Below are positions 4,043 through 50,760 of a stretch of 64,000 nucleotides of DNA, one piece after another. The translations under genes and the position numbers were made by a program. Location of the stretch: positions 248,001 through 312,000 of the forward strand of contig MU063057.1 of assembly GCA_013265495.1 (NCBI GenBank). The letters run 5' to 3'. A model generated the notes under the pieces. It ran no database searches and was not told the DNA's origin. It worked only from the letters and a program-made list of their open reading frames with translations. Source of the DNA: Vicugna vicugna (Eukaryota). Position 1 is the first letter of the stretch; every line of letters starts with the position of its first letter.

Positions 4043-6169
<2,127 letters not shown>

Positions 6170-8217: not shown

Positions 8218-10150
<1,933 letters not shown>

Positions 10151-14334: not shown

Positions 14335-16929
14335 GTACGTCCCGGCCTGGCGGGGCAGGGACGCAGCACTGGGCTGCCTTCTGGTCTCACCCACACCCAG
14401 CCCGAGGGCCTTGATGGCTGGCCACCCTCCTGGTCCTGGGACAAACCGGGGCTGAGCCAACCAGACGTCACCTCCTCAGTGTGTCTCACTGGGGTCCCAC
14501 CTGCTGAAGGAAAGGCTTGACTGTGGGGACAGGGTCCCTGGGGCTGGCTGGGAAGCGCTCCACCTGGCAGCCTGGATGTACTCCTGTCCTCGCTCCAACT
14601 GGCCCCGGGACCCTTGGTTGAGTTTTCTGGTTTAATCTCAGCTCAGTCTCACCTGCTCACCTGAGTGATGGGTGCAGGGTTTAGAGACGGGACAGGGGTT
14701 AGCAGGAGTTTTAGGGGCTGTAGGAATGCTATTGGCTGAGTGAGGTGGGGAAGGGGGGGTCCTGGGTGCTGGGCCCAGTGTGGGAACCCAGGCCAGACTT
14801 CCCCTTCCCCACCCCGCCCTGAGCTCCAGTGTGATGAAGGAGTGGAGGGCCGAGCCCACGGCTCCCCAGGTGGGTGGCCCCACCCTGGTCCTCGGAGGCC
14901 CTGCCCTGGGAGCCAGGCTGGGGAGATAGACATGCCCTTCCGTCCTCCTTAGCCTGCCTGTTCCCACAAGTGTGCACAGAGCACACACCCTCTCATGTGC
15001 TGGGACTCTTGGGGCCCCGAGTGTCCATCCCTGGCTTGGGCGTGTGGGGCTGGCTGAGTTGGGCCAAGGGAATGGTGGCTGGAGGCTGCTGGGGATCCCC
15101 AGAGTCTCCAGGGGTCACCGGCAGCCACTTGCTCCCTGGGCAGAGCTGCAGACAGTGGTCTCTGCAGGGCCTGGATGGGGGCTTCCAAGGCCTGCTTCTC
15201 CACCGGGCCCCTGGTGTGTGGTCACTGTTGTGTCCCATTCCAGGAGCCCAGGCACACCAAAGAATCCTTGGGGGAGGAAGGATAGAAGGACCTGGGAAGC
15301 CTTGGCAGGCCCCCAGTTTGGGCAGGGTAGGGACACTGGGGTTCTCCTGTTCCTACTCCCTGCTAGCCAGAACCAGCTCAGCTCAGAGAGGACAGCATAA
15401 AGACACTGCCCCTGGGGCTTGAGCTGCAGTTCTCCTCAGAGCCCTCCGGCAGCACAGGCCTGGGGCAGTGGTCCTCAGAGCACAGCAGGGCTGCCAGACC
15501 TCACTGGGCCCCCCGCCCAGCAGACATCTCCCAGACTTGCCACCGCAGGCACCACTTAGTTTCAATCTATCACTTTGTCAGCACCACTGATGGGTCCCCC
15601 TCCCTCCTCCTCCTTGTCCCCCCATTTCTTTTCCTTCCTTGCACCATCTCCCCATCCCCATTCCTCCCACTCCTCTCCCCTCTGAGTTCTGCGGACCTTG
15701 GGTGAGTCCTTCCCTCCATTTCTGGGACCATCCAATGGGATGGACGCTGTCCATGGGCGGCCTTGGGGATAGGGTAGACCCAGTCCAGGGCTCAGGGCTC
15801 ATCTATGCCTGTGGTGGCCACCCTCCCCCAGGCCTGGCTCTTCTGTCTGTGCAGACAGGAGGAGCTCAACCCCTCCTGGGCCGCAGGCAAAGGGCAGACA
15901 GGGAGGGGGCATCTGGGACAAATGCTGGTGTCTTCCCAGCACACTCTAGGGTCCCCGCCAGTGGGGTGGGCTGTGGGGGTACAGCACCTGTGGTGGTGGT
16001 GCATGTGCCTGCCCCTCTGGGCTGTTCCTGGTGCGTGTCTCTGCTCATCAGCCCTTGGGCACACCACACCCCCGGCACAAGAGGCTTTGGAGCAACACGT
16101 GTGCGTGCCACCTGTGATCCGCAAGCCTGGTGTGAACCCACATCCAGCTGAGTGTGTGGATGTGTCTGGGAGGGGCTGGTGCAAAATGAAAGTCAGAGCC
16201 CCTTGGTCAAAAATTATGGAGAATTTCAAGACAGTGGCTGCAGAGCATCAAAACCAGGAAGGGGTCCTGTGTGACTGCACATGTCATGTGCCAGTGAAGC
16301 CAGCCATGCTCCCTTGGCTGGGTGAAGCAGGGTGCCGCCAGGGTTGAGCGCTGAGTGGGCCTGGGGTGGGCCGCCAGCTTTGCATGGGGTCTGTCTCCCA
16401 GGCTGACCCCTGTCCCGTGTGAGCTGCGCAAGCTTCGGGGTCCTGGCGCAGCCCTTGTCCAGCACAGGGTGGGCTGCTCGGAGAGTGTGCACCCGCTGTG
16501 TGTTCCGGCTGTAGTCCCCGAGCTCCCTCATCTGGGCCAGAGGTCTGGGCCGGAGCTGCCCCAAGTCGCCACCAGACGGCAACTGGGTCACCCCTCATTT
16601 GCATAATGCTTTGCATTTTGCGTGGGTCAGAGGTCTCTGAGCCCAGCTTGGGGGCAAGGACGGGGACGTCGTGCCCGGGACTGAGCGCTGCCTGGGGCCC
16701 CTGCCCTCAGCCCCCAGCCCCCGCCATCGCTTCCCGGGCTGGGCGGGCAGGGGAAGTGGAAGGCCGAGGGGCGCCGGCGCGGGCGGAGGGCCGGGGGCGG
16801 GGGCGCCGTCCCGGGGCTGCGATTGGCCCGCGCAGGGCGGCGCGGTCGGATTTGCGAGGCGGCGCGGCGAGGGGTGGCCGGGGCGGGGGTCTTCGCGGGG
16901 GCGGGGCTGGTGCGGATTGGCCAGCGGGC

Positions 16930-16949
16930 NNNNNNNNNNNNNNNNNNNN
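16930..16949. other. Assembly gap (20 N)
   Basis: Run of N characters inside the GC-rich island. Confidence 1.
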
Positions 16950-17029
16950 CGGGTCCGAGAGGGGCGGCGCGCCCGGTGCCACCGCGGCCCGGGGCGCGGG
17001 GGCTGGGGCGGCCCCGGCGGCCCCGCGCG

Positions 17030-17311
17030 ATGCGCCGCTCAAGCACAGACGAGTCCACGTACCGGCGCAGCCCGTCGCCGCCGGGCAAGGAGCCGGGCTT
17101 CGCGCGCGGCGGCGCCTTCTTCGGCCTGCACGCCAATCCCGGCCCCAAGGCGGCCCAGGCGCGCTACACGTCGCCCAAGGGTAACAAGTACGTGGTCTTC
17201 TACCTGGACCTCTCCTTCATCTTCCTCCTAGAGCTGAAGCGCTGCAGCATGGCGCGCGGCTGCCTCCAGGGCGTCAAGTACCTCATGTTCGCCTTCAACC
17301 TGCTCTTCTGG
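17030..17311 (+). CDS. TSPAN4: Putative long first coding exon of an N-terminally extended TSPAN4 isoform (73 extra aa; 311 aa total)
   Basis: ATG 17030 is 219 nt upstream of and in frame with canonical ATG 17249, with no stop; 68 of 73 codons end in G/C. Confidence 0.55.
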
Positions 17312-20300
17312 GTGAGTGGCCGCGGGATGTCGGGGATCCGGGGTCGCCGCTTCGGCAGGGGTACGTGGGGGACACCCGGGACGTGGACTGGGAGGCGTGC
17401 CTGGGGGTCGCCGCTCCCTCTGCGGGCCAGGGCTGGATCGGCCCCTGGGGAGGGTTTCCGGTACCTCTGGGGTCCGCCCCGGCCTCTGCACTCTGGGCGG
17501 CCGCCCCGCATCCTCTCCCTGCTCCGTCTCTTCCTGAGACCAGGCGCGTCCCGCACCTGCCGCAGGATCGCCTCAGGCCCCGCGCCTGGCCTCTGCCGGG
17601 TTTAAGTCCCTGTCGGTGCGCGGGGCCGCGGGTGCCTTCCCTCCGTCCCCTTCCTCCCTCTTCGTGGCTGCAGTGCTCGTCTCTTCTTGCCTCCCCTCCT
17701 CAGCAGACTGGCCTACCGGGCCCCAGGGACCACACTTAGGGAGGGGCTGAGGAGGGGAGCGCGGTGGGGCGGGAGAGGAGGGTGTGTGGGTGATTGCGCT
17801 GGTTGGGCCCGAGCCTGAGCAGGATGGTGGGCCAGCAGGAGAGGGGGCTGGCCTGTGCTGCCTCATCCAACGTGGGGGGGGGCATCCATAACTTTTGCAG
17901 AGTTGGGTTGGGTTTGCTCAGATGAGGTGCCTGTGTTCAGGGTCAGAGGTGTTGGCGCTGCAGGGTTGTCCCCTCCCTGCAAGATTGAGAACAGAGGGTC
18001 CACCCGGTCCCGTAAGGGCAGAGAGGGTGCTGGGCTGGGGCTGGGGCAGGTGTCACACTTGGCTCCACTGGTCGCGCTGGGAGAAGGTTGGTGGAGACAT
18101 GATGCCAAGGTCACACTCCCTGCTCAGTTGTTAATTCGTGATCGGACCCTCCTTCCACAACTGGGAGTAAGGGGGTGTGGCTTTAGCTCCTGCCTGGGCT
18201 CTGGGCCCCAGAAGAAGGCTGTCATTTGTAAGCTCATTTGCATGAGGTCCAGTTAAGGCCAAATGCTCAGAAAGCCCGTCTGCCTTTCTGCACCTCCCTT
18301 CCATCCTGGGCGCTGGCTTTCCTCTCCTCAGTTTGTTAAGGGGGGGGTGTCCCTGGGAGGGGTGGCCAGCCTGGGAGGCTCCTGCCCTGATGCCCGTCTC
18401 CAGAAGGGGTCACCCGCAGGTTTTCTTCTCTGCAGGGGGCTCCTGGGAGGGGCAGGCCCCAGGCCAGAGTGGAGGGGTACGCGGGAGGCCAAGAGCCAGC
18501 AGCAGAGGCGGTGTGCAGCTGGAGCTCTGCCCAGGCATGAGAAGAGGGGACTGTCTTCTCTTGGTGGGGGACGTTGACCAAACGTAGGGGCACCAGTGTG
18601 GTTAGCACTGAGCGGCTGGCAGGGTAAGCATGCCCTTGGCAGTGTGACAGGAGAAGGCTGCAGGTGACAGTGTGACCAGAGCTGGCAGCCATGGGTGTGA
18701 GGGAGGTGAGCCGTGTTTGTGGCAGAGTGACAGGGGAATGGGCTGAGGGTGTGAGGGATGGTCCTACGTGGTGGCAGCACCTGCTTCTCCCCTTCCCTTC
18801 CCTCCTCAGTGACCTCTGCTTGCATGGAGGAGAAGGGGTCCCTCAACGTGGCCTGTGCTCTGAGAGAAGCCCACCCCAATGGGCTGTCTTTGCCCTGTGC
18901 ACCCGCAGGAGCCCCCTGCCAGCTGCAGGGTGGACACGCTCCACTGATCCCCATTGTGGATGCCGTCCTCAGCCTAGGGAAGAAAAGTCAGGAAGCCCTC
19001 TGGGACTCTCCCCTGAGGAGAAAATCCAATTCTCTTTCATTATCCAATTAAATTTCCCAGCCAAGCCAACCGGGCCCCTGTACCAGCCTTGGCCCCTCCA
19101 CGCCCCAGCTTCATGTCAGGGGAGTGCAGAGGCCTGGCAGTCAGAAAGTGGACCCATGGGAGATGTGCTGAGGCCAGGGGTGGGGAGAATGGCTGCAGGC
19201 TGGGCGCGACACTCACCCTGCTTTGTCCCTGTGCAGGTGCCAGCTGAGCCCTTCCTGCTGGGGACCAAGGCTGCAGGCAACAGGGTGGCGGCTAGAACAT
19301 GCCTTCCCAGGGACGCTGGCTCCTTTGCTGCCTGGGGGCACTGGGTCCCCACAGGAGTGGTAGTTTTTGCCCCCAACTCCATTTCTCCCCGAGAGTGTCC
19401 TGCCTCAGCCTCCCCACTGTGTTTTTTAAGTAACCCCGTTATTGAAATTTATGTGGTATTTATTCACATACCACACAATTAACCCATTTGAAATGTGCAG
19501 TTCAGTGCTATTCACAGAGTTGTGCAACCATCACCAAAATAAATTTTAGGACATTTGATTCGAGTCATGAAAGGTTCACCATGGGCTCCGAGGTGGTGGT
19601 GGGGGAGCCAGTGGGCTGGAGACCCTCTCCCCCTCACCTGTGTCAGTCCTGACTCCACCCTCCAGGGATGGGCCGGCTCTGGCCATAATTGACTCCTCGT
19701 GCTCTGTTGGACAGGTCTCCCTGGGGGCTCCTGGCTGGAGTCCTGAGGGCAGGGCTGAGGCCTCCAGCCTTGGGTCCCAGTGGGGCCGGGAAATGTCAGT
19801 ACCCATCTGTCCCAGGGTTGCTCTGCCCGTTCCTGGGTGGCCGGTGGGTCATGGACCCATCTCGGGAGGAACCAGGCCTGCTTGTTGTCACCAGTGCTTG
19901 GAGCTGGGGTGCCCTGAGAAGGGGAGCCAGGAGGGCGCAGGCGGGTGGCAGGGTCACTGGGGGAGGAGAGGCCCAGAGGGGCCGGCGCTGGGGTCTCTCC
20001 GAGCTCAGAGTGGCCAACTCCCAGAACTGCACCTGCCATCCTGCAGCGGACGGGCCCTCACAGGCAAGGGGCAGCCCCCCTGGGGGTGCAGCCTCCCTTC
20101 TCTGAGGTGTGCACAGGGGGTCAGCAGCTTAGGGCCAGGGTCCCTGGGGCAGGGTGTCTCCTGGGAGCCCCATGCTGGTGATTAGGGCTCTGTGCGGGGC
20201 CCAGGAGTGAGGGCCAGGGGCTGAGCAGCCCCTGGGAAGCGGCCGGGGTTGGGCAGAGGAGGGAGGCGCCTCCCTGCCCCTTCCTTGCTCTGGGTCAGGT

Positions 20301-23300: not shown

Positions 23301-26300
23301 TTCTAGCCTGGAGCTCTCCTGTCCACCTCAGCCAGCCCTGGGCAAGGCCGAGAGGGACCTCGGACACCAGCAGCAGACTTGGGCCAGAGCCCCTGGTGCC
23401 TGCCCACACCCCTGGGATCCTGAGGCTGCTCCTGCTCTTGGGCTGGGAGCTGTACCGCCCCCACCCCGTAACTGCAGTCTTCCGCCAGCCTGGCTTAATG
23501 CATGTGTGCTCCCCAGGGACTTAGTGAGAGTGGAGCAGCGGCCCCCACCCCTACCCCTGCAGCCAGGGCTGAACTGCTGGTGTGGGCAGGGCGAGTGAGT
23601 ACATGTGCGGAGGGAGAAGCCCTCCTTAGGCAGGGGTTTCAGGGCCCATCAGGCCTGCCTAAGTCATGGGGTATCTACCAGGGTCCAGGCCAGCCTCAAG
23701 GAGGCTTCTGGGCCCCCGGGGTGCAGGGCCCCATGTCCTGTCCAGTCGGCGAGTGGTGTGGAGCCCCCAGGGCTGCCTGGCCTCCCCCGAGCCTGTCAGC
23801 CATCCGCCTCCAGCTGGTCTCTCAAAGCCTGGGTTGCCTCAGGACCCAGAACCGGCTAGCATTTGTAGGGAGCTGCCTGCCCCTAGCCTGTGCCCTGGAC
23901 ACCTTCTCCCGTTTTATCTCGGGATGACTCAGAGACCTCAGAGTCCTGGGGGGCCAGAGCCGCAGCCCCTCAGCTGCCCTGGCTCCACCCTGCTCCCCAC
24001 CCCTAGGAGGTGGGCATCCCTTCCTCACGGAAGGCCGAGAGCCCGCCTTGGATTCACCACCGCCTGGCCTTCTCCCCTTCCTCATTTTAATTGATTTTTG
24101 TAGTAACAAGCAATTATGGAGCTCAATAAAAGCTGCAGTGGTGAAGGAGAGGTGGTGGCAAGGGCACGTGGGGGCTGCACTTCAGAAGGGATGGTTAGGG
24201 GAGGGCGTGTGGGGGCCCAGCCGGGGTGACGGGACAAGACGGGGAGTTCGGGGGGCCGCCCGGGACCTGGCGGGACGCTCACCTGCTACTCTGCCGTCCC
24301 TCTCTCCCCGCCTGGGTCCCAGCTGGGAGGCTGCGGCATCCTGGGCGTTGGCATCTGGCTGGCCGCCACGCAGGGGAACTTCGCCACCCTGTCCTCCTCC
24401 TTCCCGTCCCTGTCGGCCGCCAACCTGCTCATTGTCACCGGCACCTTTGTGATGGCCATTGGCTTTGTGGGCTGCATCGGGGCCATCAAGGAGAACAGAT
24501 GCCTCCTGCTCACTGTGAGTCAGGGCGGGGCGCTGGGGCCGGGCCGGGCGGGGCCCCCCTTCACAGGACACAGACACACAGGTGCCCGCACACCCACACG
24601 CATGCCAGGCAGGGCCCCTTCAGCCGGTACCGGGCCCATGCTCTCTGACACCACCTCTCCCATGACCCCTCCCGGCTCCTGCCCCTGCCCTCTTGGCTCC
24701 CCAGGACCCTCTGTTCAGAGCTCCCAGCCCTCGCCTCAGCTTCGGAGGTGGATTTACAGGCAGGATGTTTCCATCCTGGGGAACATAAATCACAGGAGAA
24801 GGATAAAGGACCCCTGGGCCAGGCTATGCCTATTAGTATGCCTGGCAGCGGCCTCTGGCGGCTGACTCAAGCCTGAAATCACCTGCTTCATCTGGGGCCT
24901 CTGTCTGAGGAGCCCTTGCTGGGGAGGGGCCTCCCAGAGGGTGCGTCCCCTGTCTGTGCAGCTACCCAACGTGTCCAGTATATGCCCCAGATGTTCCCTT
25001 CAGGGCGGCGGGTAGGGGTGGAGCTGAGGCCCCCAACCCTGACCTTTCCCACGGGGTGACTTGGAGGTCAGAGGCTAGTGCTCCACTGCTCAGCCCGGCC
25101 AGGGCACCTGGGCTGAGGTCAAGGCTGTGACTTGAGGTACCACCACCCAGTGGGCCACTGTGCGGTCACAGGTGGGGGCTTCTCTAACTTGTTCCTGCCT
25201 GAGTGGGCAGTGGCCACCCCTGGCTGTCCTGAGGGATGGGACCTGGGGGTTGGGGGTCACTGCAGTCAGACCCACTCCCTGCAGGGGCCCCCTTGGGCAT
25301 CGCTGCACCTGCCCGCCCAGCACAAGGACACGGGTCCGGAGCACACGTGTGTGCTCGAAGACGTGAGGCTGTGCCCAGAGGCCGGGCAAGACCCGACAGC
25401 CCCTGGCACAGAGACTGGAGGGCTCCGAGGGAGGTGGGGCAGCACGAGTGGGGCCTGCAGACCTGGATTGGGGGCTCGGGCTGAGGCTCGCGCCCCACCC
25501 TCTGGGGGCAGCTGGGGGCTGGGTCGCTGAGGCCGCCGGGTCCTCGCCCGCAGTTCTTCGTGCTGCTGCTGCTGGTGTTCCTGCTGGAGGCCACCGTCGC
25601 CATCCTCTTCTTCGCCTACACTGACAAGGTGCGGCTCCCCCACTTCGGGTGTGGGGGCTCCATCCTCACCACCATGAGGGCCACGGTGCACAGGCGACGA
25701 GGGGGCAGGGGCCCTAGCACGGCGTGGACCAACAATGGGACCCGGCCGTGCATCTAATTTTAACCGCAACCATTGGAGGCCGGGCCTGGAGGGAAACGCT
25801 GGGGCCCTGGAGGGCAGAGCAGTGTGAGCTCCCAGGTGGCCCCCAGGCTCGGCCCCCTGCTCCTGCTGACTTCAGCTGTGTATCAGTTGGATGGGGAAAA
25901 TCTATCCCCCATGGATTTATTTCATTACTTATACCAGTGAGGGCTCATTTACAATGTTCTGAGTTACACACTCCAGGACTGTTTTTCTTGCTCGTCTGTC
26001 TTAGTTTTGGTGGCGAGGAGCGCTCACTTGCTCCTGAGTGGAGGTGCACTGAAGGGGGTGCACCTCCTCTCTGGGGAGTCCCTGCCCCAGCCCTGGACTC
26101 GGCCATTTCTCCAAGGAGCCTGGTTCCTTTCCTGGAGGATGGTCTTAGGAACGAGGACCTCGGCCCTCTTGGCCGACAGCGGGGAGACGTGCGGGTCCTG
26201 ACGGGTGTGGGCAGACGCAGCTGAGGGTTTCTGTACTGTCTCCCTCTGAACATAACTGACGGAGGTCGTGCTGATGTGTCTGACTCGAACCCCGGGCTCA

Positions 26301-27427
26301 GCACCACGGGTGGCCCAGGGAGACCAAGGGGCAAAGGCCTGAGCCTGCTGAGGGCTTCTGGGAGGGGGTGACTCCAGGAAGGGGGACAGAAGGCACGGGG
26401 TGGGGGCCTGGGCAGAGGTGGGGTCTGGACGAGGTAGGTGGAGCTGGCTGCAGGGTGGCCCCGCTGTCCTGCAGATCGACAGGTACGCGCAGCGGGACCT
26501 GAAGAGGGGCCTGCACCTATACGGCACCCCGGGCAACGTGGGCCTCACCAACGCCTGGAGCATCATCCAGACAGACGTGAGTCGGGGCGTGGCAGTGCCG
26601 GGCGTGGGCGGTGCCAGGGCGCGGCCAGGGGACAGTCCCAGCCCGCACTTCTTCCGCAGTTCCGCTGCTGCGGGGTCTCCAACTACACCGACTGGTTCGA
26701 AGTCTACAACGCCACGCGCGTGCCTGACTCCTGCTGTTTGGAGTTCAGCGAGAGCTGCGGGCTGCACGCGCCCGGCACCTGGTGGAAAGCGGTGAGGCTG
26801 TGCCCTTCCCCCGGCTCTGGCCCCGGGGACTTGAGGGTGGAGCGCCGGCCTCGCAGCCCCCTGTGACGCCTGCTTTTCCTCCAGCCCTGTTACGAGACGG
26901 TGAAGATGTGGCTCCAGGAGAACCTGCTGGCCGTGGGTGTCTTCGGACTGTGCACAGCTCTGGTGCAGGTAGGGGGTGGGGCTGCCACCAGAACCGCTGG
27001 ACCCACCCCAGCCCCCGCCTTCTTCCCCATGGCAAGTCCTGAATGTGGCAGCATCAGGGAAACCCATCTCCGGGGTGCAGACGGGGGTTGCAGCCAGAGC
27101 GGGCGGACAGCACCAAAGGTGCTGATTGCAGTTGGACTAACGGGCAGAGAGCGGCTGCTGGGGCCAGGCCCCTGGGCCCTGACACCACCCGTGGAGGCCA
27201 GGGTGGGTGGCCAAACCTGAGGGGAAGGGGTCTGGGCTGAGCCCTAGGGTTACAGGCCATCCAGGCAATGGGGTAGGGTCAGGGTGCCTACTGCGGCAGG
27301 ACCTCTCTGGGCTGTCATCCCTGGAGCAGCCCTGCCCAGCTGCCACCTGTCCCCACAGATCCTGGGGCTGACCTTCGCCATGACCATGTACTGCCAGGTG
27401 GTGAAGGCGGACACCTACCGTGCGTAG
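17249..27427 (+). CDS. TSPAN4: Tetraspanin-4, 238 aa: join(17249..17311,24323..24514,25554..25628,26475..26576,26660..26791,26885..26968,27359..27427)
   Basis: Seven phase-0 GT-AG exons, 21+64+25+34+44+28+22 = 238 aa: MARGCLQGVKYLMFAFNLLFW-LGGCG...FRCCGVSNYTDWFEVYNATRVPDSCC...VVKADTYRA*. The ATG exon acceptor CCTCCTAG ends at 17231. Confidence 0.98.
19422..19556 (-). mobile_element. Old L1M 3'-region fragment (antisense)
   Basis: AT-rich ttattgaaatttatgtggtatttattcacataccacacaattaacccatttgaaatgtgcagttcagtg...gttgtgcaaccatcacc is typical reverse-strand L1M 3'UTR sequence. Confidence 0.7.
25890..26010 (-). mobile_element. Degraded L1ME-like fragment (antisense)
   Basis: AT-rich patch aaaatctatcccccatggatttatttcattacttataccagtgaggg resembles reverse-strand L1 (aaaatggtatctcattgtggttttaatttgcatt...actagtgagg). 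Confidence 0.4.
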
Positions 27428-49479: not shown

Positions 49480-50760
49480 TTTATCAGCCCCGTGCTGCGT
49501 TAACCGCGGGTCTGTTCAGACCCCGGGAGCAGGCACTGCGTCGTTCCCTCCACAAATGAGGCCGAGGAAGCCGCCCCGAGGCAGCCCTGGTGGGCGGTGA
49601 GCGGCCGCCGGGCGACCCCAGCTCCACAGGCGGCGGAAGCGAGATGGGATGGAGGTCGGGGTCGGCCGCCCAACCGCGGTCCCCCGACTGCTGCGGGCTC
49701 ATGCCTAGGAGCCCCTCCCCAGTGTGGAAGATCTGCAGCCTTCAGCGTCTGGGACTGAGGCGAAGAGGGAGTCAGCCTAGCGCGCCCCAAAGCGCATCGG
49801 GGTCACCCGCCCCCGCGCTGGCCCGCCCTGCCCGCAGCCACGCTCGCTGCCGCCCACACAGGCTCGCGCCTCCCGCTCCTCCCGCTGCCCACGCCTCGTC
49901 CTCTCGTGCGCACCCGCTGTCACACCGCCTCCCGTCCACGCCCGCCGCCCCTCCTGCCCGCACACGCAACCCCGCGCGCCCACTCCGCGGAGGGGAACTG
50001 AGGCCCTGGGAGCCGGGGAAGCAGGCGCCGGAACTCGGGGCGCGAACGCCACCCCGGCGGGCCGCCGCGGGGCTCACCTGCATGTCGCAGGGCTCACCTG
50101 CATGTCCCGGAGGGCCACCGGACCCCCCTCGCGCGTGGCCGGAAGACGCTCGCTAACGCCGCCGGAAGTCCCGCCCCAGGATGCCCGCGCGCCGCCGCCG
50201 CGCACAGCACGCTGGGGGGGGGTCCCGGCTACGGGCCGAGGGGCGGGGCCTGGAGGACAGAACCCGGGGGAGGATCGATCTCGGGGCGGAGCGAGGCCGA
50301 GGGGCGAGACCGGGCCGGGGGCGGGGCGCTGGGCGGGGCGGGGCTGACGCTGGGGGCGGGGCGAATCCGAGGGGCTGGGCCAGGGGCGGAGCCGACCCAG
50401 AGGAGGAGCCCGGCGGGGACTCGGCGGGGTCCAGACTCGGGCACCCGAACTGAGAGCCCGCGCGCGCCGACCCCGGCCTTCCGTGGGCCCTGGCCTCTGA
50501 TGGGAACCAAACGCCCTCTCTCGAGAGCTGGCGCGGAGGTCTGGGTTCCAAGGGGCGCGCAGTCCCCTCTCCTCCCCAGCGCACGCTCTGTGGAAGGCCC
50601 GGCTCCGGGTGCGATGTCTGCGCTGCGACCACCTGGGTGACCACCAGGGCGCGCCGCGGGCTCCAAGGCCTTTGCCCAGCCGGGCAGGGGGCCGAGGGGA
50701 CCTCGCAGGACCGACCTCCCGCACTTCCACGTTCTCTCTTGGACCCAGGAATCGCCTCTC
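49480..50760 (-). promoter_or_regulatory. CHID1: CHID1 CpG-island promoter; exon 1 ends at 50098 or 50078; ETS motifs CCGGAAG 50139-50145 and CCGGAAGT 50162-50169; GC boxes
   Basis: Dense CpG, tandem ETS/GABP-type motifs next to CCGCCCC, a G-rich Sp1/G4 array at about 50312-50362, and two CAG|GTGAGC donors on the minus strand. Exon 2 acceptor begins at 46072. Confidence 0.75.

What the first reader, a model, noticed from the sequence alone, without database searches (positions are those of the whole stretch)
17030..17311. Hidden 73-aa N-terminal extension of TSPAN4 whose last codons double as the canonical splice acceptor
Seen: ATG 17030 (G at -3) runs in frame without stops into the canonical ATG 17249, adding MRRSSTDESTYRRSPSPPGKEPGFARGGAFFGLHANPGPKAAQARYTSPKGNKYVVFYLDLSFIFLLELKRCS. 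68 of 73 codons end in G/C, including A/T-rich codons (AAG, TAC, TTC, AAC), which is the 3-periodic pattern of real coding sequence rather than plain CpG-island DNA. Nucleotides 17030-17231 are intronic in the distal-promoter transcript, and the polypyrimidine tract CTCTCCTTCATCTTCCTCCTAG encodes LSFIFLLE, so the same DNA is both splice signal and codons. Known: tetraspanins normally have very short cytoplasmic N-termini, and TSPAN4 is a migrasome organiser. Inference: promoter choice yields a 311-aa tetraspanin with an RRxS/SP-rich phospho-type tail and an extra hydrophobic segment (YVVFYLDLSFIFLL) that could alter topology or trafficking. Automated gene models may already predict it; I cannot check that.
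Basis: partly seen in the sequence, partly recalled or inferred. Interest (0 to 1): 0.78.

Follow-up and report, generated by a model that had tools for sequence, protein, structure and literature searches.

The report
Conserved long N-terminal form of TSPAN4
The stretch just upstream of the camel TSPAN4 start codon is real protein-coding sequence, kept from sharks to mammals and shared with the sister gene TSPAN9; it gives a longer tetraspanin that gene-prediction pipelines already list but that no paper I could find has studied.

Summary
ATG 17030 runs without a stop into the TSPAN4 start at 17249, and 68 of 73 codons end in G/C (GC1/2/3 = 0.58/0.53/0.93). The open frame alone proves nothing in this GC-rich island; the periodicity and cross-species evidence do.

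- Relatives: the same extension precedes TSPAN4 in mammals, birds, reptiles, amphibians, ray-finned fishes, sharks and rays. It also precedes TSPAN9 and a frog TSPAN4-like gene.
- Selection: strongly purifying (camel/murid 18 synonymous vs 6 non-synonymous changes, omega about 0.09; bird/turtle 21 vs 1).
- Dual use: the Leu codon before the acceptor is CTA or TTA in all 8 sequences, keeping ...YYYTAG|AG in every lineage.
- Not hidden: the exact 311-aa product is already a predicted record (XP_010954243.1, XP_064348038.1, KAB1251407.1). All records listed are automatic; no paper was found.
- Transcripts: a spliced murid RNA contig carries the extension.
- Structure: the hydrophobic segment does not score as a transmembrane helix, and the tail is predicted disordered.

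Most likely this is a hybrid first/internal exon whose proximal promoter gives a tailed TSPAN4 with a cytosolic regulatory N-terminus. No earlier scan note covers it.

The parts
16601..17400 (.). CpG island around the extension; candidate proximal promoter of the long-isoform transcript (contains an N gap at 16930-16949)
   Evidence: GC>0.6 and CpG obs/exp>0.75; GC 0.70-0.78. ATTGG motifs at 16822-16826 and 16916-16920 and GGGGCGGGG boxes were read; these are consensus matches only, and promoter activity was not tested.
17030..17248 (+). 73-codon N-terminal extension of TSPAN4 (M1-S73), coding only in transcripts that start upstream of it
   Evidence: homologues; alignment A1; omega 0.01-0.09; identical to residues 1-73 of P0186.
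17030..17032 (+). Upstream start codon, G at -3, C at +4
   Evidence: M1 is invariant in 23 vertebrate TSPAN4 sequences. There is a purine at -3 in all 9 loci plus the window, and GCCACCATG in the bird. Protein-level conservation begins at the ATG (upstream in-frame sequence is unrelated even between bird and turtle); nucleotide similarity starts about 10 nt before it.
17107..17108 (+). Site of the cetartiodactyl in-frame loss of a block of about 25 codons (...FRRYSSxYG...) that other vertebrates have
   Evidence: Alignments. Camel, deer, goat and toothed-whale proteins all lack it.
17189..17236 (+). Codons for the near-invariant hydrophobic segment Y54-L69 (YVVFYLDLSFIFLLEL)
   Evidence: Invariant or nearly invariant columns in A1. 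Crude insertion sum is +8.6, against -3.2 to 0 for TM1-TM4. In AF2 the helix runs from L61 on into TM1, at pLDDT 53-78.
17210..17231 (+). Polypyrimidine tract (17210-17229) plus acceptor AG (17230-17231), used when upstream non-coding exons are spliced in; the same bases encode L61-L67 and the first base of the E68 codon
   Evidence: 84% pyrimidines in the 25 nt before the AG. The Leu codon is CTA (7) or TTA (1) in 8/8 sequences, including TSPAN9 and the frog paralogue. Mouse P0172 and stoat P0177 splice in frame onto |ELKRC.
17232..17311 (+). The exon in its internal form (short 5'UTR, then canonical ATG 17249 and 21 codons), ending at donor GT 17312-17313
   Evidence: FW|GTGAGT is conserved in every genomic locus.
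24323..24514 (+). TSPAN4 coding exon 2
   Evidence: Exact mapping of P0186 with AG/GT splice sites.
25554..25628 (+). TSPAN4 coding exon 3
26475..26576 (+). TSPAN4 coding exon 4
26660..26791 (+). TSPAN4 coding exon 5
26885..26968 (+). TSPAN4 coding exon 6
27359..27427 (+). TSPAN4 last coding exon, stop codon included
8901..10100 (.). Distal CpG island next to POLR2L (minus strand, coding 8221-9379); presumed distal TSPAN4 promoter whose transcripts use the acceptor at 17231
   Evidence: CpG island. Use of this island as the TSPAN4 promoter is inferred from my recollection of the human locus and was not tested.

Best explanation
Positions 17030-17311 are a hybrid first/internal exon of TSPAN4.

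Two ways of using the exon:
- Distal start: when transcription starts at a distal promoter, upstream non-coding exons are spliced to the acceptor at 17231|17232. Translation then starts at ATG 17249 and gives the textbook 238-aa tetraspanin.
- Proximal start: when transcription starts inside the proximal CpG island (about 16950-17020), the acceptor has no upstream donor to pair with. The tract is read as codons, and translation from ATG 17030 gives a 311-aa protein with 73 extra N-terminal residues (90-97 in most other vertebrates). Leaky scanning past the weaker upstream ATG (+4 C) could still give some short form.

The extension is an ancient module. It occurs in TSPAN4 across jawed vertebrates, in TSPAN9 of rays, teleosts and a mammal-like contig, and in a frog TSPAN4-like gene, so it most likely predates the TSPAN4/TSPAN9 duplication. 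It has two parts:
- a disordered Ser-rich tail with conserved short motifs (SS[ST][DE][DE]S, RSPS, FFG-H-PGPK);
- a near-invariant juxtamembrane block, KYVVFYLDLSF[IV]FLLE[LF]K[KR]C, directly ahead of TM1.

Inferred, not shown: the whole extension stays cytosolic. The hydrophobic block extends the TM1 helix or lies on the inner leaflet, possibly anchored by the extra invariant Cys72. The tail is a phospho-regulated docking or sorting region that changes trafficking or microdomain behaviour of the tailed isoform.
For: SHOWN
- ORF, periodicity and coordinates.
- 279 proteins matched at E<=0.01. The named ones among the 120 listed run from mammals to sharks and rays, with 100% coverage and 57-98% identity.
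- In 23 TSPAN4 sequences M1, R13-S16 and most of Y54-C72 are invariant, and all indels are in frame.
- Conservation starts at the ATG. Upstream in-frame sequence is unrelated even between bird and turtle, while downstream they agree at 110/111 residues.
- Nei-Gojobori counts on the extension only: camel/murid sd 18, nd 6, omega 0.086; bird/turtle sd 21, nd 1, omega 0.010; camel/bird pS 0.72 (saturated) with pN 0.17.
- Synonymous drift is visible at conserved residues: Gly51 is GGT/GGC/GGA/GGG and Ser4 is TCA/TCC/TCT/TCG.
- The same module sits in proteins their sources name tetraspanin-9, and in a frog tetraspanin-4-like gene.
- The exact 311-aa protein P0186 maps to seven AG/GT-bounded exons.
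- Acceptor use: mouse and stoat models are spliced in frame onto |ELKRC; CTA/TTA is present in 8/8 sequences and the tract is 80-84% pyrimidine.
- First-exon use: the murid-like Logan contig L001 has a 230-nt leader, an in-frame stop 13 codons before the ATG, the unspliced tract, and then exons 2-3 spliced on. P0218 runs on through exon 5.

INDIRECT, CAMEL
- Small RNA-type runs hold 0.79 of the sampled words of 16951-17134. That is the highest share any listed run reached for that probe, including the runs of unknown type.
- They hold only 0.45-0.56 of 16951-17700, where the runs of unknown type X15 and X16 hold 0.95. So they hold the exon but little of the downstream intron.

INFERRED TOPOLOGY
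- The hydrophobic block sums to +8.6 on a crude insertion scale, against -3.2 to 0 for TM1-TM4. It is 16 residues long with a central Asp and basic flanks on both sides.
- AF2 gives residues 1-60 as disordered and a helix from 61 to 111 continuous with TM1.
Against: - There is no direct evidence of translation: no Ribo-seq or peptide data were available.
- All database records listed are automatic predictions (XP_, TrEMBL, assembly submitters). These pipelines tend to take the longest ORF of a transcript model, so the records are not independent proof.
- The middle block is lost in cetartiodactyls, and the extension is more degraded in the armadillo and shrew models. Constraint is therefore uneven in mammals. 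Camel against another mammal gives omega 0.27 on only 11 differences.
- Part of the invariance of LSFIFLL may come from the splice signal, because these residues are the ones with pyrimidine-rich codons. The protein role of that stretch is confounded.
- The AF2 model is weak (mean pLDDT 58.8, 43-sequence alignment).
Confidence: 0.8

Rival explanations
1. The conservation is nucleotide-level (promoter, CpG island, 5'UTR element, splice signals) and the open frame is incidental; no extended protein matters.
For: The region lies in a CpG island, where stop-free runs of this length are the rule (98% of shuffles). It does contain a conserved splice acceptor and polypyrimidine tract. No translation data are available.
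Against: Synonymous sites are saturated between camel and bird (pS 0.72) while pN is 0.17. Bird/turtle shows 21 synonymous against 1 non-synonymous change. Third positions drift freely at conserved residues. All indels are multiples of three, the ATG is invariant, and conservation begins at it. The same peptide is kept in paralogous genes with different nucleotide composition, GC3 from 0.46 to 0.97.
Confidence: 0.04
2. Only the N-terminal tail (about M1-K53) is selected as protein. The invariance of the hydrophobic block, and its hydrophobic character, is mainly a by-product of having to encode a polypyrimidine tract and AG acceptor in frame.
For: L, S, F, I, F, L, L are the residues whose codons are pyrimidine-rich. 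Third positions in the tract are nearly always C or T. The CTA/TTA codon is fixed by the acceptor.
Against: The equally invariant KYVVFYLD just upstream uses purine-containing codons and is not explained by the tract. ELKRC downstream of the acceptor is also conserved. Synonymous variability in the tract (1.1 extra codons per site) equals the rest (1.15). No conserved branch-point-like motif was found; GGTAAC is camel-specific.
Confidence: 0.12
3. The hydrophobic segment is a fifth transmembrane helix or signal anchor (TM0) that puts the N-tail outside the cell and changes tetraspanin topology.
For: It is a 16-residue hydrophobic run directly before TM1, separated from it by a short basic loop.
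Against: The crude insertion sum is +8.6, against -3.2 to 0 for the four real helices, and Kyte-Doolittle is 1.26 against 1.96-2.86. The segment has a central Asp and a Glu. Both flanks are strongly basic, and the tail has roughly twice as many basic as acidic residues, which by the positive-inside rule argues for a cytosolic tail (sequence reading). AF2 draws it as a continuation of the TM1 helix, not a hairpin, though at low confidence.
Confidence: 0.06
4. The upstream ATG acts chiefly as a translational throttle on the canonical start (uORF-like), and the long product is a tolerated by-product.
For: The upstream ATG has a weaker +4 base (C) than the canonical one (AGCATGG) in most loci, so both starts could be used on one mRNA.
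Against: A throttle needs no amino-acid conservation, yet omega is 0.01-0.09 over 72-89 codons and the peptide is shared by paralogues. The ORF is in frame and never terminated, so the long protein is necessarily made whenever the ATG is used.
Confidence: 0.03

Closest known systems
Predicted TSPAN4 long isoforms in RefSeq/UniProt (camelid XP_010954243.1, XP_064348038.1, KAB1251407.1, UniRef A0A5N4BXT5; goat XP_017901126.1; chicken XP_040529014.1; zebrafish tspan4a XP_009292176.1)
   Same: Identical protein: P0186, 311 aa, maps residue for residue onto the window. The orthologues carry the same extension.
   Different: Nothing differs in sequence. These are automatic models without experimental annotation. 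None of the cluster members listed carries a curated NP_ accession, and I found no paper on them.
TSPAN9 long isoforms (tetraspanin-9-like isoform X1 of rays, 329 aa; tetraspanin-9 isoform X2 of teleosts)
   Same: The same module sits upstream of, and in frame with, the canonical start. The RSPS motif, KYVVFYLDLSFVFLLEFKKC, and the same CTA-GAA acceptor arrangement are all present.
   Different: It is a paralogous gene. The tail is more diverged (starts MEKSSS, longer Gly/Ala-rich middle), and pN against TSPAN4 is about 0.3.
Hybrid first/internal exons (Sci Adv 2022, PMC8769537; Nucleic Acids Res 2024, PMC11797052)
   Same: One exon is used as an internal exon through its 3' splice site and as a first exon from a start site just upstream. 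The sequence before the acceptor is exonic in one form and intronic in the other.
   Different: Here the extra 5' part is not just UTR. It is a 73-97-codon coding module under strong purifying selection, so the polypyrimidine tract and AG are also codons, and the arrangement has been held in two paralogues for the whole history of jawed vertebrates. I read only the abstracts listed and did not check whether TSPAN4 is in their lists.
Canonical tetraspanins (Pfam PF00335) with short cytosolic N-termini; palmitoylated juxtamembrane cysteines (established knowledge of the family)
   Same: The remaining 238 residues are a standard tetraspanin: four hydrophobic helices and the CCG motif.
   Different: The long form has a cytosolic N-terminus of roughly 80 residues (the 73 added ones plus the canonical ~10) instead of about 10, with an extra invariant Cys (C72) and a hydrophobic block ahead of TM1.
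Other predicted TSPAN4 N-terminal variants (mouse XP_006536287.1/EDL18110.1, 271 aa; stoat XP_032214277.1, 256 aa)
   Same: They also lengthen the N-terminus and share ELKRCS-M, because they splice into the same acceptor in frame.
   Different: Their added residues come from other upstream exons and are unrelated to each other and to the conserved module. They look like incidental ORFs.

Membership tests
Tetraspanin family (PF00335) | Pfam tetraspanin domain above the gathering score | tested here: met
   The orthologous long isoform P0023 scores 192.9 bits (cut-off 32.1) over residues 104-324. The window's own product P0186 is 93-97% identical to its mammalian orthologues in A2.
Tetraspanin family (PF00335) | Four transmembrane helices and the CCG motif in the large extracellular loop | tested here: met
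   Four hydrophobic minima at 91-109, 129-147, 159-178 and 275-293. FRCCGVSNY is present in P0186. C220, C221 and G222 are invariant in A2.
TSPAN4 orthologue | Best identity to proteins named tetraspanin-4, and exact mapping of a named TSPAN4 record | tested here: met
   P0186 'tetraspanin-4 isoform X2 [Camelus bactrianus]' maps exactly to seven exons.
TSPAN4 orthologue | Conserved neighbourhood (POLR2L upstream, CHID1 downstream) | tested here: inconclusive
CHID1 at about 50070 is known only from an unchecked scan note.
Functional N-terminal extension (alternative proteoform from an upstream in-frame AUG) | In-frame AUG with no intervening stop, conserved across species | tested here: met
Functional N-terminal extension (alternative proteoform from an upstream in-frame AUG) | Purifying selection on the added codons (omega well below 1) | tested here: met
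   Omega 0.086 (camel/murid), 0.010 (bird/turtle), 0.07-0.12 (mammal/sauropsid).
Functional N-terminal extension (alternative proteoform from an upstream in-frame AUG) | A mature mRNA that contains the upstream AUG | tested here: met
   Met in a murid-like species: spliced Logan contig L001 and product P0218.
Functional N-terminal extension (alternative proteoform from an upstream in-frame AUG) | Translation initiation at the upstream AUG, or detected peptides | not testable with these tools
   No Ribo-seq or proteome data were available. The peptide strings occur in no searchable paper text.
Hybrid first/internal exon | Used as an internal exon through a 3' splice site | tested here: met
   Mouse P0172 and stoat P0177 join other exons in frame at |ELKRC. 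The AG and pyrimidine tract are conserved in 8/8 sequences. This was shown in other species; the camel has the same signals.
Hybrid first/internal exon | Used as a first exon from a start site just upstream of the acceptor | tested here: inconclusive
   The murid mRNA contig has a 230-nt leader that shares a short block just upstream of the ATG with another mammal's genomic sequence, but contig ends are not mapped start sites. A camel start site was not observed.
2A-like ribosome-skipping peptide (D[VI]ExNPGP) | The D-x-E-x-N-P-G-P motif, conserved | tested here: not met
   The camel has GLHANPGPK without D-x-E. The Asn is S or A in deer, pangolin, gar and eel, and TSPAN9 has no NPGP.
Extra transmembrane helix or signal anchor | A hydrophobic stretch of about 19 or more residues with favourable insertion energy | tested here: not met
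   Sum +8.6 against -3.2 to 0 for TM1-TM4, with 16 apolar-rich residues interrupted by Asp and Glu.

The most novel reading that the evidence does not exclude
TSPAN4 and TSPAN9, textbook 'short-tailed' tetraspanins, each have an unstudied tailed isoform whose 73-97-residue cytosolic N-terminal module is older than their duplication and more constrained than much of the core protein. Promoter choice at a hybrid exon toggles the tail on or off. The tail (RSPS and acidic Ser cluster, plus the invariant KYVVFYLDLSFIFLLELKRC block) acts as a phospho-regulated sorting or assembly switch for tetraspanin microdomains, and so possibly for TSPAN4-driven migrasome formation. The splice acceptor and the protein block have co-constrained each other for more than 400 million years.
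Probability: 0.4. Interest if true: 0.65.

Novelty: already known. Interest (0 to 1): 0.45.

Why it matters
TSPAN4 is the standard marker and organiser of migrasomes, and TSPAN9 is a platelet and endosomal tetraspanin. As far as I know, experiments use the 238/239-aa forms. If a tailed isoform is made, three things follow:
- Constructs, antibodies and knock-outs that consider only the canonical start miss or mix two proteins with very different cytosolic faces.
- The tail offers a concrete, testable handle on how these tetraspanins are regulated or sorted, through conserved Ser motifs, an extra juxtamembrane Cys and an invariant hydrophobic block.
- The locus is a clean natural example of codons and a 3' splice signal constraining each other over the whole history of jawed vertebrates.

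For genome annotation it is ordinary. The isoform is already in automatic gene sets, and the mechanism (alternative promoter at a hybrid exon) is well known.

Tried and rejected
I did not resend those positions, so there is no read-level camel evidence.
- ORF length as evidence: rejected, because 98% of shuffles of the island give open runs as long.
- Pfam on the 73 aa: no family.
- ESM Atlas look-alikes for the tail: only weak scores (0.49 or lower), all tetraspanin clusters; nothing usable.
- Literature: searches for TSPAN4/TSPAN9 with isoform, extension, alternative promoter, long isoform or PhyloCSF, and for five peptide strings from the extension, found nothing on it. PMC4433240 and PMC12536144 mention TSPAN4 only in other contexts.
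- 2A-like NPGP: rejected, since it is neither the full motif nor conserved.
- Extra transmembrane helix: rejected on crude hydropathy.
- GGTAAC at 17180-17185 as a conserved branch point or cryptic donor explaining the GGT codon: rejected, because other species use GGC, GGA or GGG.
- DNA for the newt and stingray loci could not be fetched (file too large; gene range too long), so the codon test has no amphibian TSPAN4 or cartilaginous-fish sequence.
- Collinearity of the murid mRNA leader with the camel island: the alignment upstream of about -10 is GC-rich noise. Only the comparison with another mammal's genomic sequence is convincing.
- Earlier scan notes: none on this locus.
Full report
WHAT IS THERE. 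ATG 17030 (G at -3) is in frame with the TSPAN4 start at 17249. There is no stop between them, and the exon ends at the donor after 17311. In that frame G+C by codon position is 0.58/0.53/0.93 (42, 39 and 68 of 73; chi-square p = 1.1e-7). The periodicity begins at about 17040-17060 and is absent from the CpG island upstream. The open frame itself is not evidence: 98% of shuffles of the island give stop-free runs of at least 94 codons, and the frame stays open upstream to the N gap at 16930-16949. The five codons that do not end in G/C are TCA, ACA, AAT, GGT and CTA.

IT IS CODING SEQUENCE.
- Homologues. A search scored on residues 1-94 found 279 proteins at E<=0.01, of which 120 were listed. 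A 100% match is named Camelus bactrianus tetraspanin-4. The named hits cover the whole extension in cetartiodactyls (97-98% identity), rodents, primates, pangolin and sea lion (74-77%), birds, lizards and turtles (65-66%), frogs and a newt, sturgeon, paddlefish, bichir, gar and teleosts (56-66%), and sharks and rays (61-66%).
- Alignment. In 23 of these sequences M1, R13-S16 and most of Y54-C72 are invariant, and every indel is in frame.
- Where conservation starts. In orthologous DNA from a murid-like rodent, another mammal, a bird, the green turtle and an electric eel, conservation starts at the ATG. The upstream in-frame sequence is unrelated even between bird and turtle, while downstream they agree at 110 of 111 residues. 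Every genomic locus ends at FW|GTGAGT.
- Selection. Nei-Gojobori counts on the extension alone give camel/murid 18 synonymous against 6 non-synonymous differences (omega 0.086) and bird/turtle 21 against 1 (omega 0.010). Camel/bird has saturated synonymous sites (pS 0.72) with pN 0.17.
- Synonymous drift. Conserved residues drift at third positions: Gly51 is GGT, GGC, GGA or GGG, and Ser4 is TCA, TCC, TCT or TCG.
This is protein-level purifying selection, not promoter or CpG-island conservation.

IT IS OLDER THAN TSPAN4. A second set of hits has the same module (MEKSSS..HRSPS..KYVVFYLDLSFVFLLEFKKC) in front of MARGCLCCLKY. Their sources name them tetraspanin-9 or tetraspanin-9-like isoform X1/X2 (rays 329 aa, teleosts 276-279 aa). 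A more diverged copy belongs to an anuran tetraspanin-4-like gene with 317-aa isoforms. TSPAN4 and TSPAN9 are close relatives, co-orthologues of C. elegans TSP-21 (PMC4433240). The module therefore most likely predates their duplication. I did not test cyclostomes or invertebrates.

THE DUAL USE IS REAL.
- Acceptor use in other species. Mouse (271 aa) and stoat (256 aa) isoform models join unrelated upstream exons in frame onto |ELKRC.MARG. That places the acceptor exactly at 17231|17232.
- Fixed codon. In all eight nucleotide sequences, including TSPAN9 and the frog paralogue, the Leu codon before Glu is CTA (seven) or TTA (one). With the G of GAR this makes the AG. The other conserved Leu codons rarely end in A. 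The 25 nt upstream are 80-84% pyrimidine.
- Consequence. CTA, one of the five non-GC3 codons in the camel, is explained by the splice site. By contrast GGT at 17180 is not conserved at the nucleotide level, so GGTAAC is not a conserved branch point or donor.
- Confound. L, S, F and I are the residues with pyrimidine-rich codons, so part of the invariance of LSFIFLL may be imposed by the tract. The equally invariant KYVVFYLD and ELKRC are not explained that way.

IT IS NOT HIDDEN. The exact 311-aa product is a database protein (P0186: XP_010954243.1, XP_064348038.1 'tetraspanin-4 isoform X2 [Camelus bactrianus]', KAB1251407.1 from C. dromedarius, UniRef A0A5N4BXT5). It maps residue for residue onto 17030-17311, 24323-24514, 25554-25628, 26475-26576, 26660-26791, 26885-26968 and 27359-27427, all with AG/GT. 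Equivalent records exist for many species. All accessions listed are automatic (XP_, TrEMBL, assembly submitters). Pfam has no model for the extension. Full-text searches for the genes with isoform or extension terms, and for peptide strings, found no paper. The searchable library is limited to CC-licensed PMC and bioRxiv, and I could not query GENCODE or curated human and mouse sets.

TRANSCRIPTS.
- Murid-like species. Logan contig L001 (SRR28256956, 1036 nt) is a spliced RNA. It has a 230-nt leader, an in-frame stop 13 codons before the ATG, the whole extension with the tract unspliced, and then exons 2 and 3. A sister product (P0218) runs on through exon 5.
Indirectly, many small runs typed as RNA (46-576 million letters, too small for DNA coverage of a mammalian genome to assemble one locus repeatedly) hold 0.79 of the sampled words of 16951-17134. 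That was the highest share any listed run reached for that probe. They hold only 0.45-0.56 of 16951-17700, where the two runs of unknown type X15 and X16 hold 0.95. This fits contigs covering the long exon and little of the downstream intron, but it is an inference.
- Promoter features. The extension lies in a CpG island (16601-17400) with ATTGG and GC-box motifs. A second island at 8901-10100 abuts POLR2L on the other strand.

WHAT THE EXTENSION LOOKS LIKE.
- AlphaFold2 on P0186 with 43 sequences is weak (mean pLDDT 58.8). Residues 1-60 are disordered (pLDDT about 35), and one helix runs from L61 through TM1 to residue 111 (pLDDT 53-78).
- On a crude insertion scale Y54-C72 sums to +8.6, against -3.2 to 0 for the four real helices. 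The segment is 16 residues long with a central Asp, and both flanks are basic. A fifth transmembrane helix is therefore unlikely, and the tail is most likely cytosolic.
- Motifs shared by TSPAN4 and TSPAN9 are an acidic Ser cluster (SS[ST][DE][DE]S), RSPS, an aromatic/Gly stretch, [ST]PKG.K, the hydrophobic block, and an extra Cys (C72) next to the canonical juxtamembrane Cys.
- The leading RR is not shared by sharks or TSPAN9.
- Cetartiodactyls, the camel included, lack an in-frame block of about 25 residues (FRRYSSxYG...) at 17107|17108. The armadillo and shrew models are more eroded.
- NPGP is not a 2A motif: there is no D-x-E and the Asn is not conserved.

MECHANISM, WITH ODDS.
- That the extension is genuine coding sequence under selection: about 0.95.
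- That it is produced from a proximal start site using a hybrid first/internal exon (the class described in PMC8769537 and PMC11797052): about 0.8.
- That the tail is cytosolic and acts as a phospho-regulated docking or sorting region, with the hydrophobic block extending TM1 or lying on the inner leaflet: about 0.4. This last step is inferred only.

VERDICT. The feature is already in automatic gene sets, so it is not new as a sequence. What appears unstudied is the biology: a deeply conserved tailed isoform shared by TSPAN4 and TSPAN9, with a splice acceptor written in its codons.

Noticed in passing
window 17107-17108: Cetartiodactyls (camel, deer, goat, toothed whales) share an in-frame loss of a block of about 25 codons (...GGPFRRYSSLYGR...) that is conserved from sharks to other mammals. 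The frame and the flanking motifs are kept.
   Followed up: partly
window 8221-9379 (minus strand) and 8901-10100: POLR2L-like coding exons with a CpG island at their 5' end, about 7 kb upstream of the TSPAN4 start exon. This is probably the bidirectional distal promoter.
   Followed up: partly
window 5476-5793: Weak tetraspanin similarity on the plus strand (27-32% identity to the TSPAN4 large loop). It may be the 3' exons of a neighbouring tetraspanin gene; CD151 is my guess from memory of the human locus.
   Followed up: no
window 16930-16949: A 20-base N run sits inside the proximal CpG island, 80 bases upstream of the long-isoform ATG, between an ATTGG motif and the likely start-site zone.
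   Followed up: no
P0001 (XP_045373240.1, isoform X6, 263 aa) against window exons: This camel model carries the extension but skips exon 3 (25554-25628) and part of the large loop, and it contains an intron-derived insert before the last helix. It looks like an aberrant or minor transcript model rather than a functional tetraspanin.
   Followed up: partly
P0172 (mouse, 271 aa) and P0177 (stoat, 256 aa): Other upstream exons spliced to the same acceptor happen to be in frame and give unrelated, unconserved N-terminal extensions. These are probably incidental ORFs of distal-promoter transcripts.
   Followed up: partly
L009 and P0154, P0221-P0225: Frogs have a second, faster-evolving tetraspanin-4-like gene that keeps a diverged copy of the module (VIVLYLDLSFLLLLELKK) and the same CTA-GAA acceptor. 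Its GC3 is only 0.46.
   Followed up: partly
window 17132-17143: The NPGP tetrapeptide (the core of viral 2A skipping sites) occurs in the tail. It lacks the D-x-E context and the Asn is not conserved, so it is almost certainly coincidental.
   Followed up: yes
window about 50070-50106: An earlier scan note places CHID1 exon 1 there, which would fit the expected TSPAN4-CHID1 neighbourhood. I did not check it.
   Followed up: no
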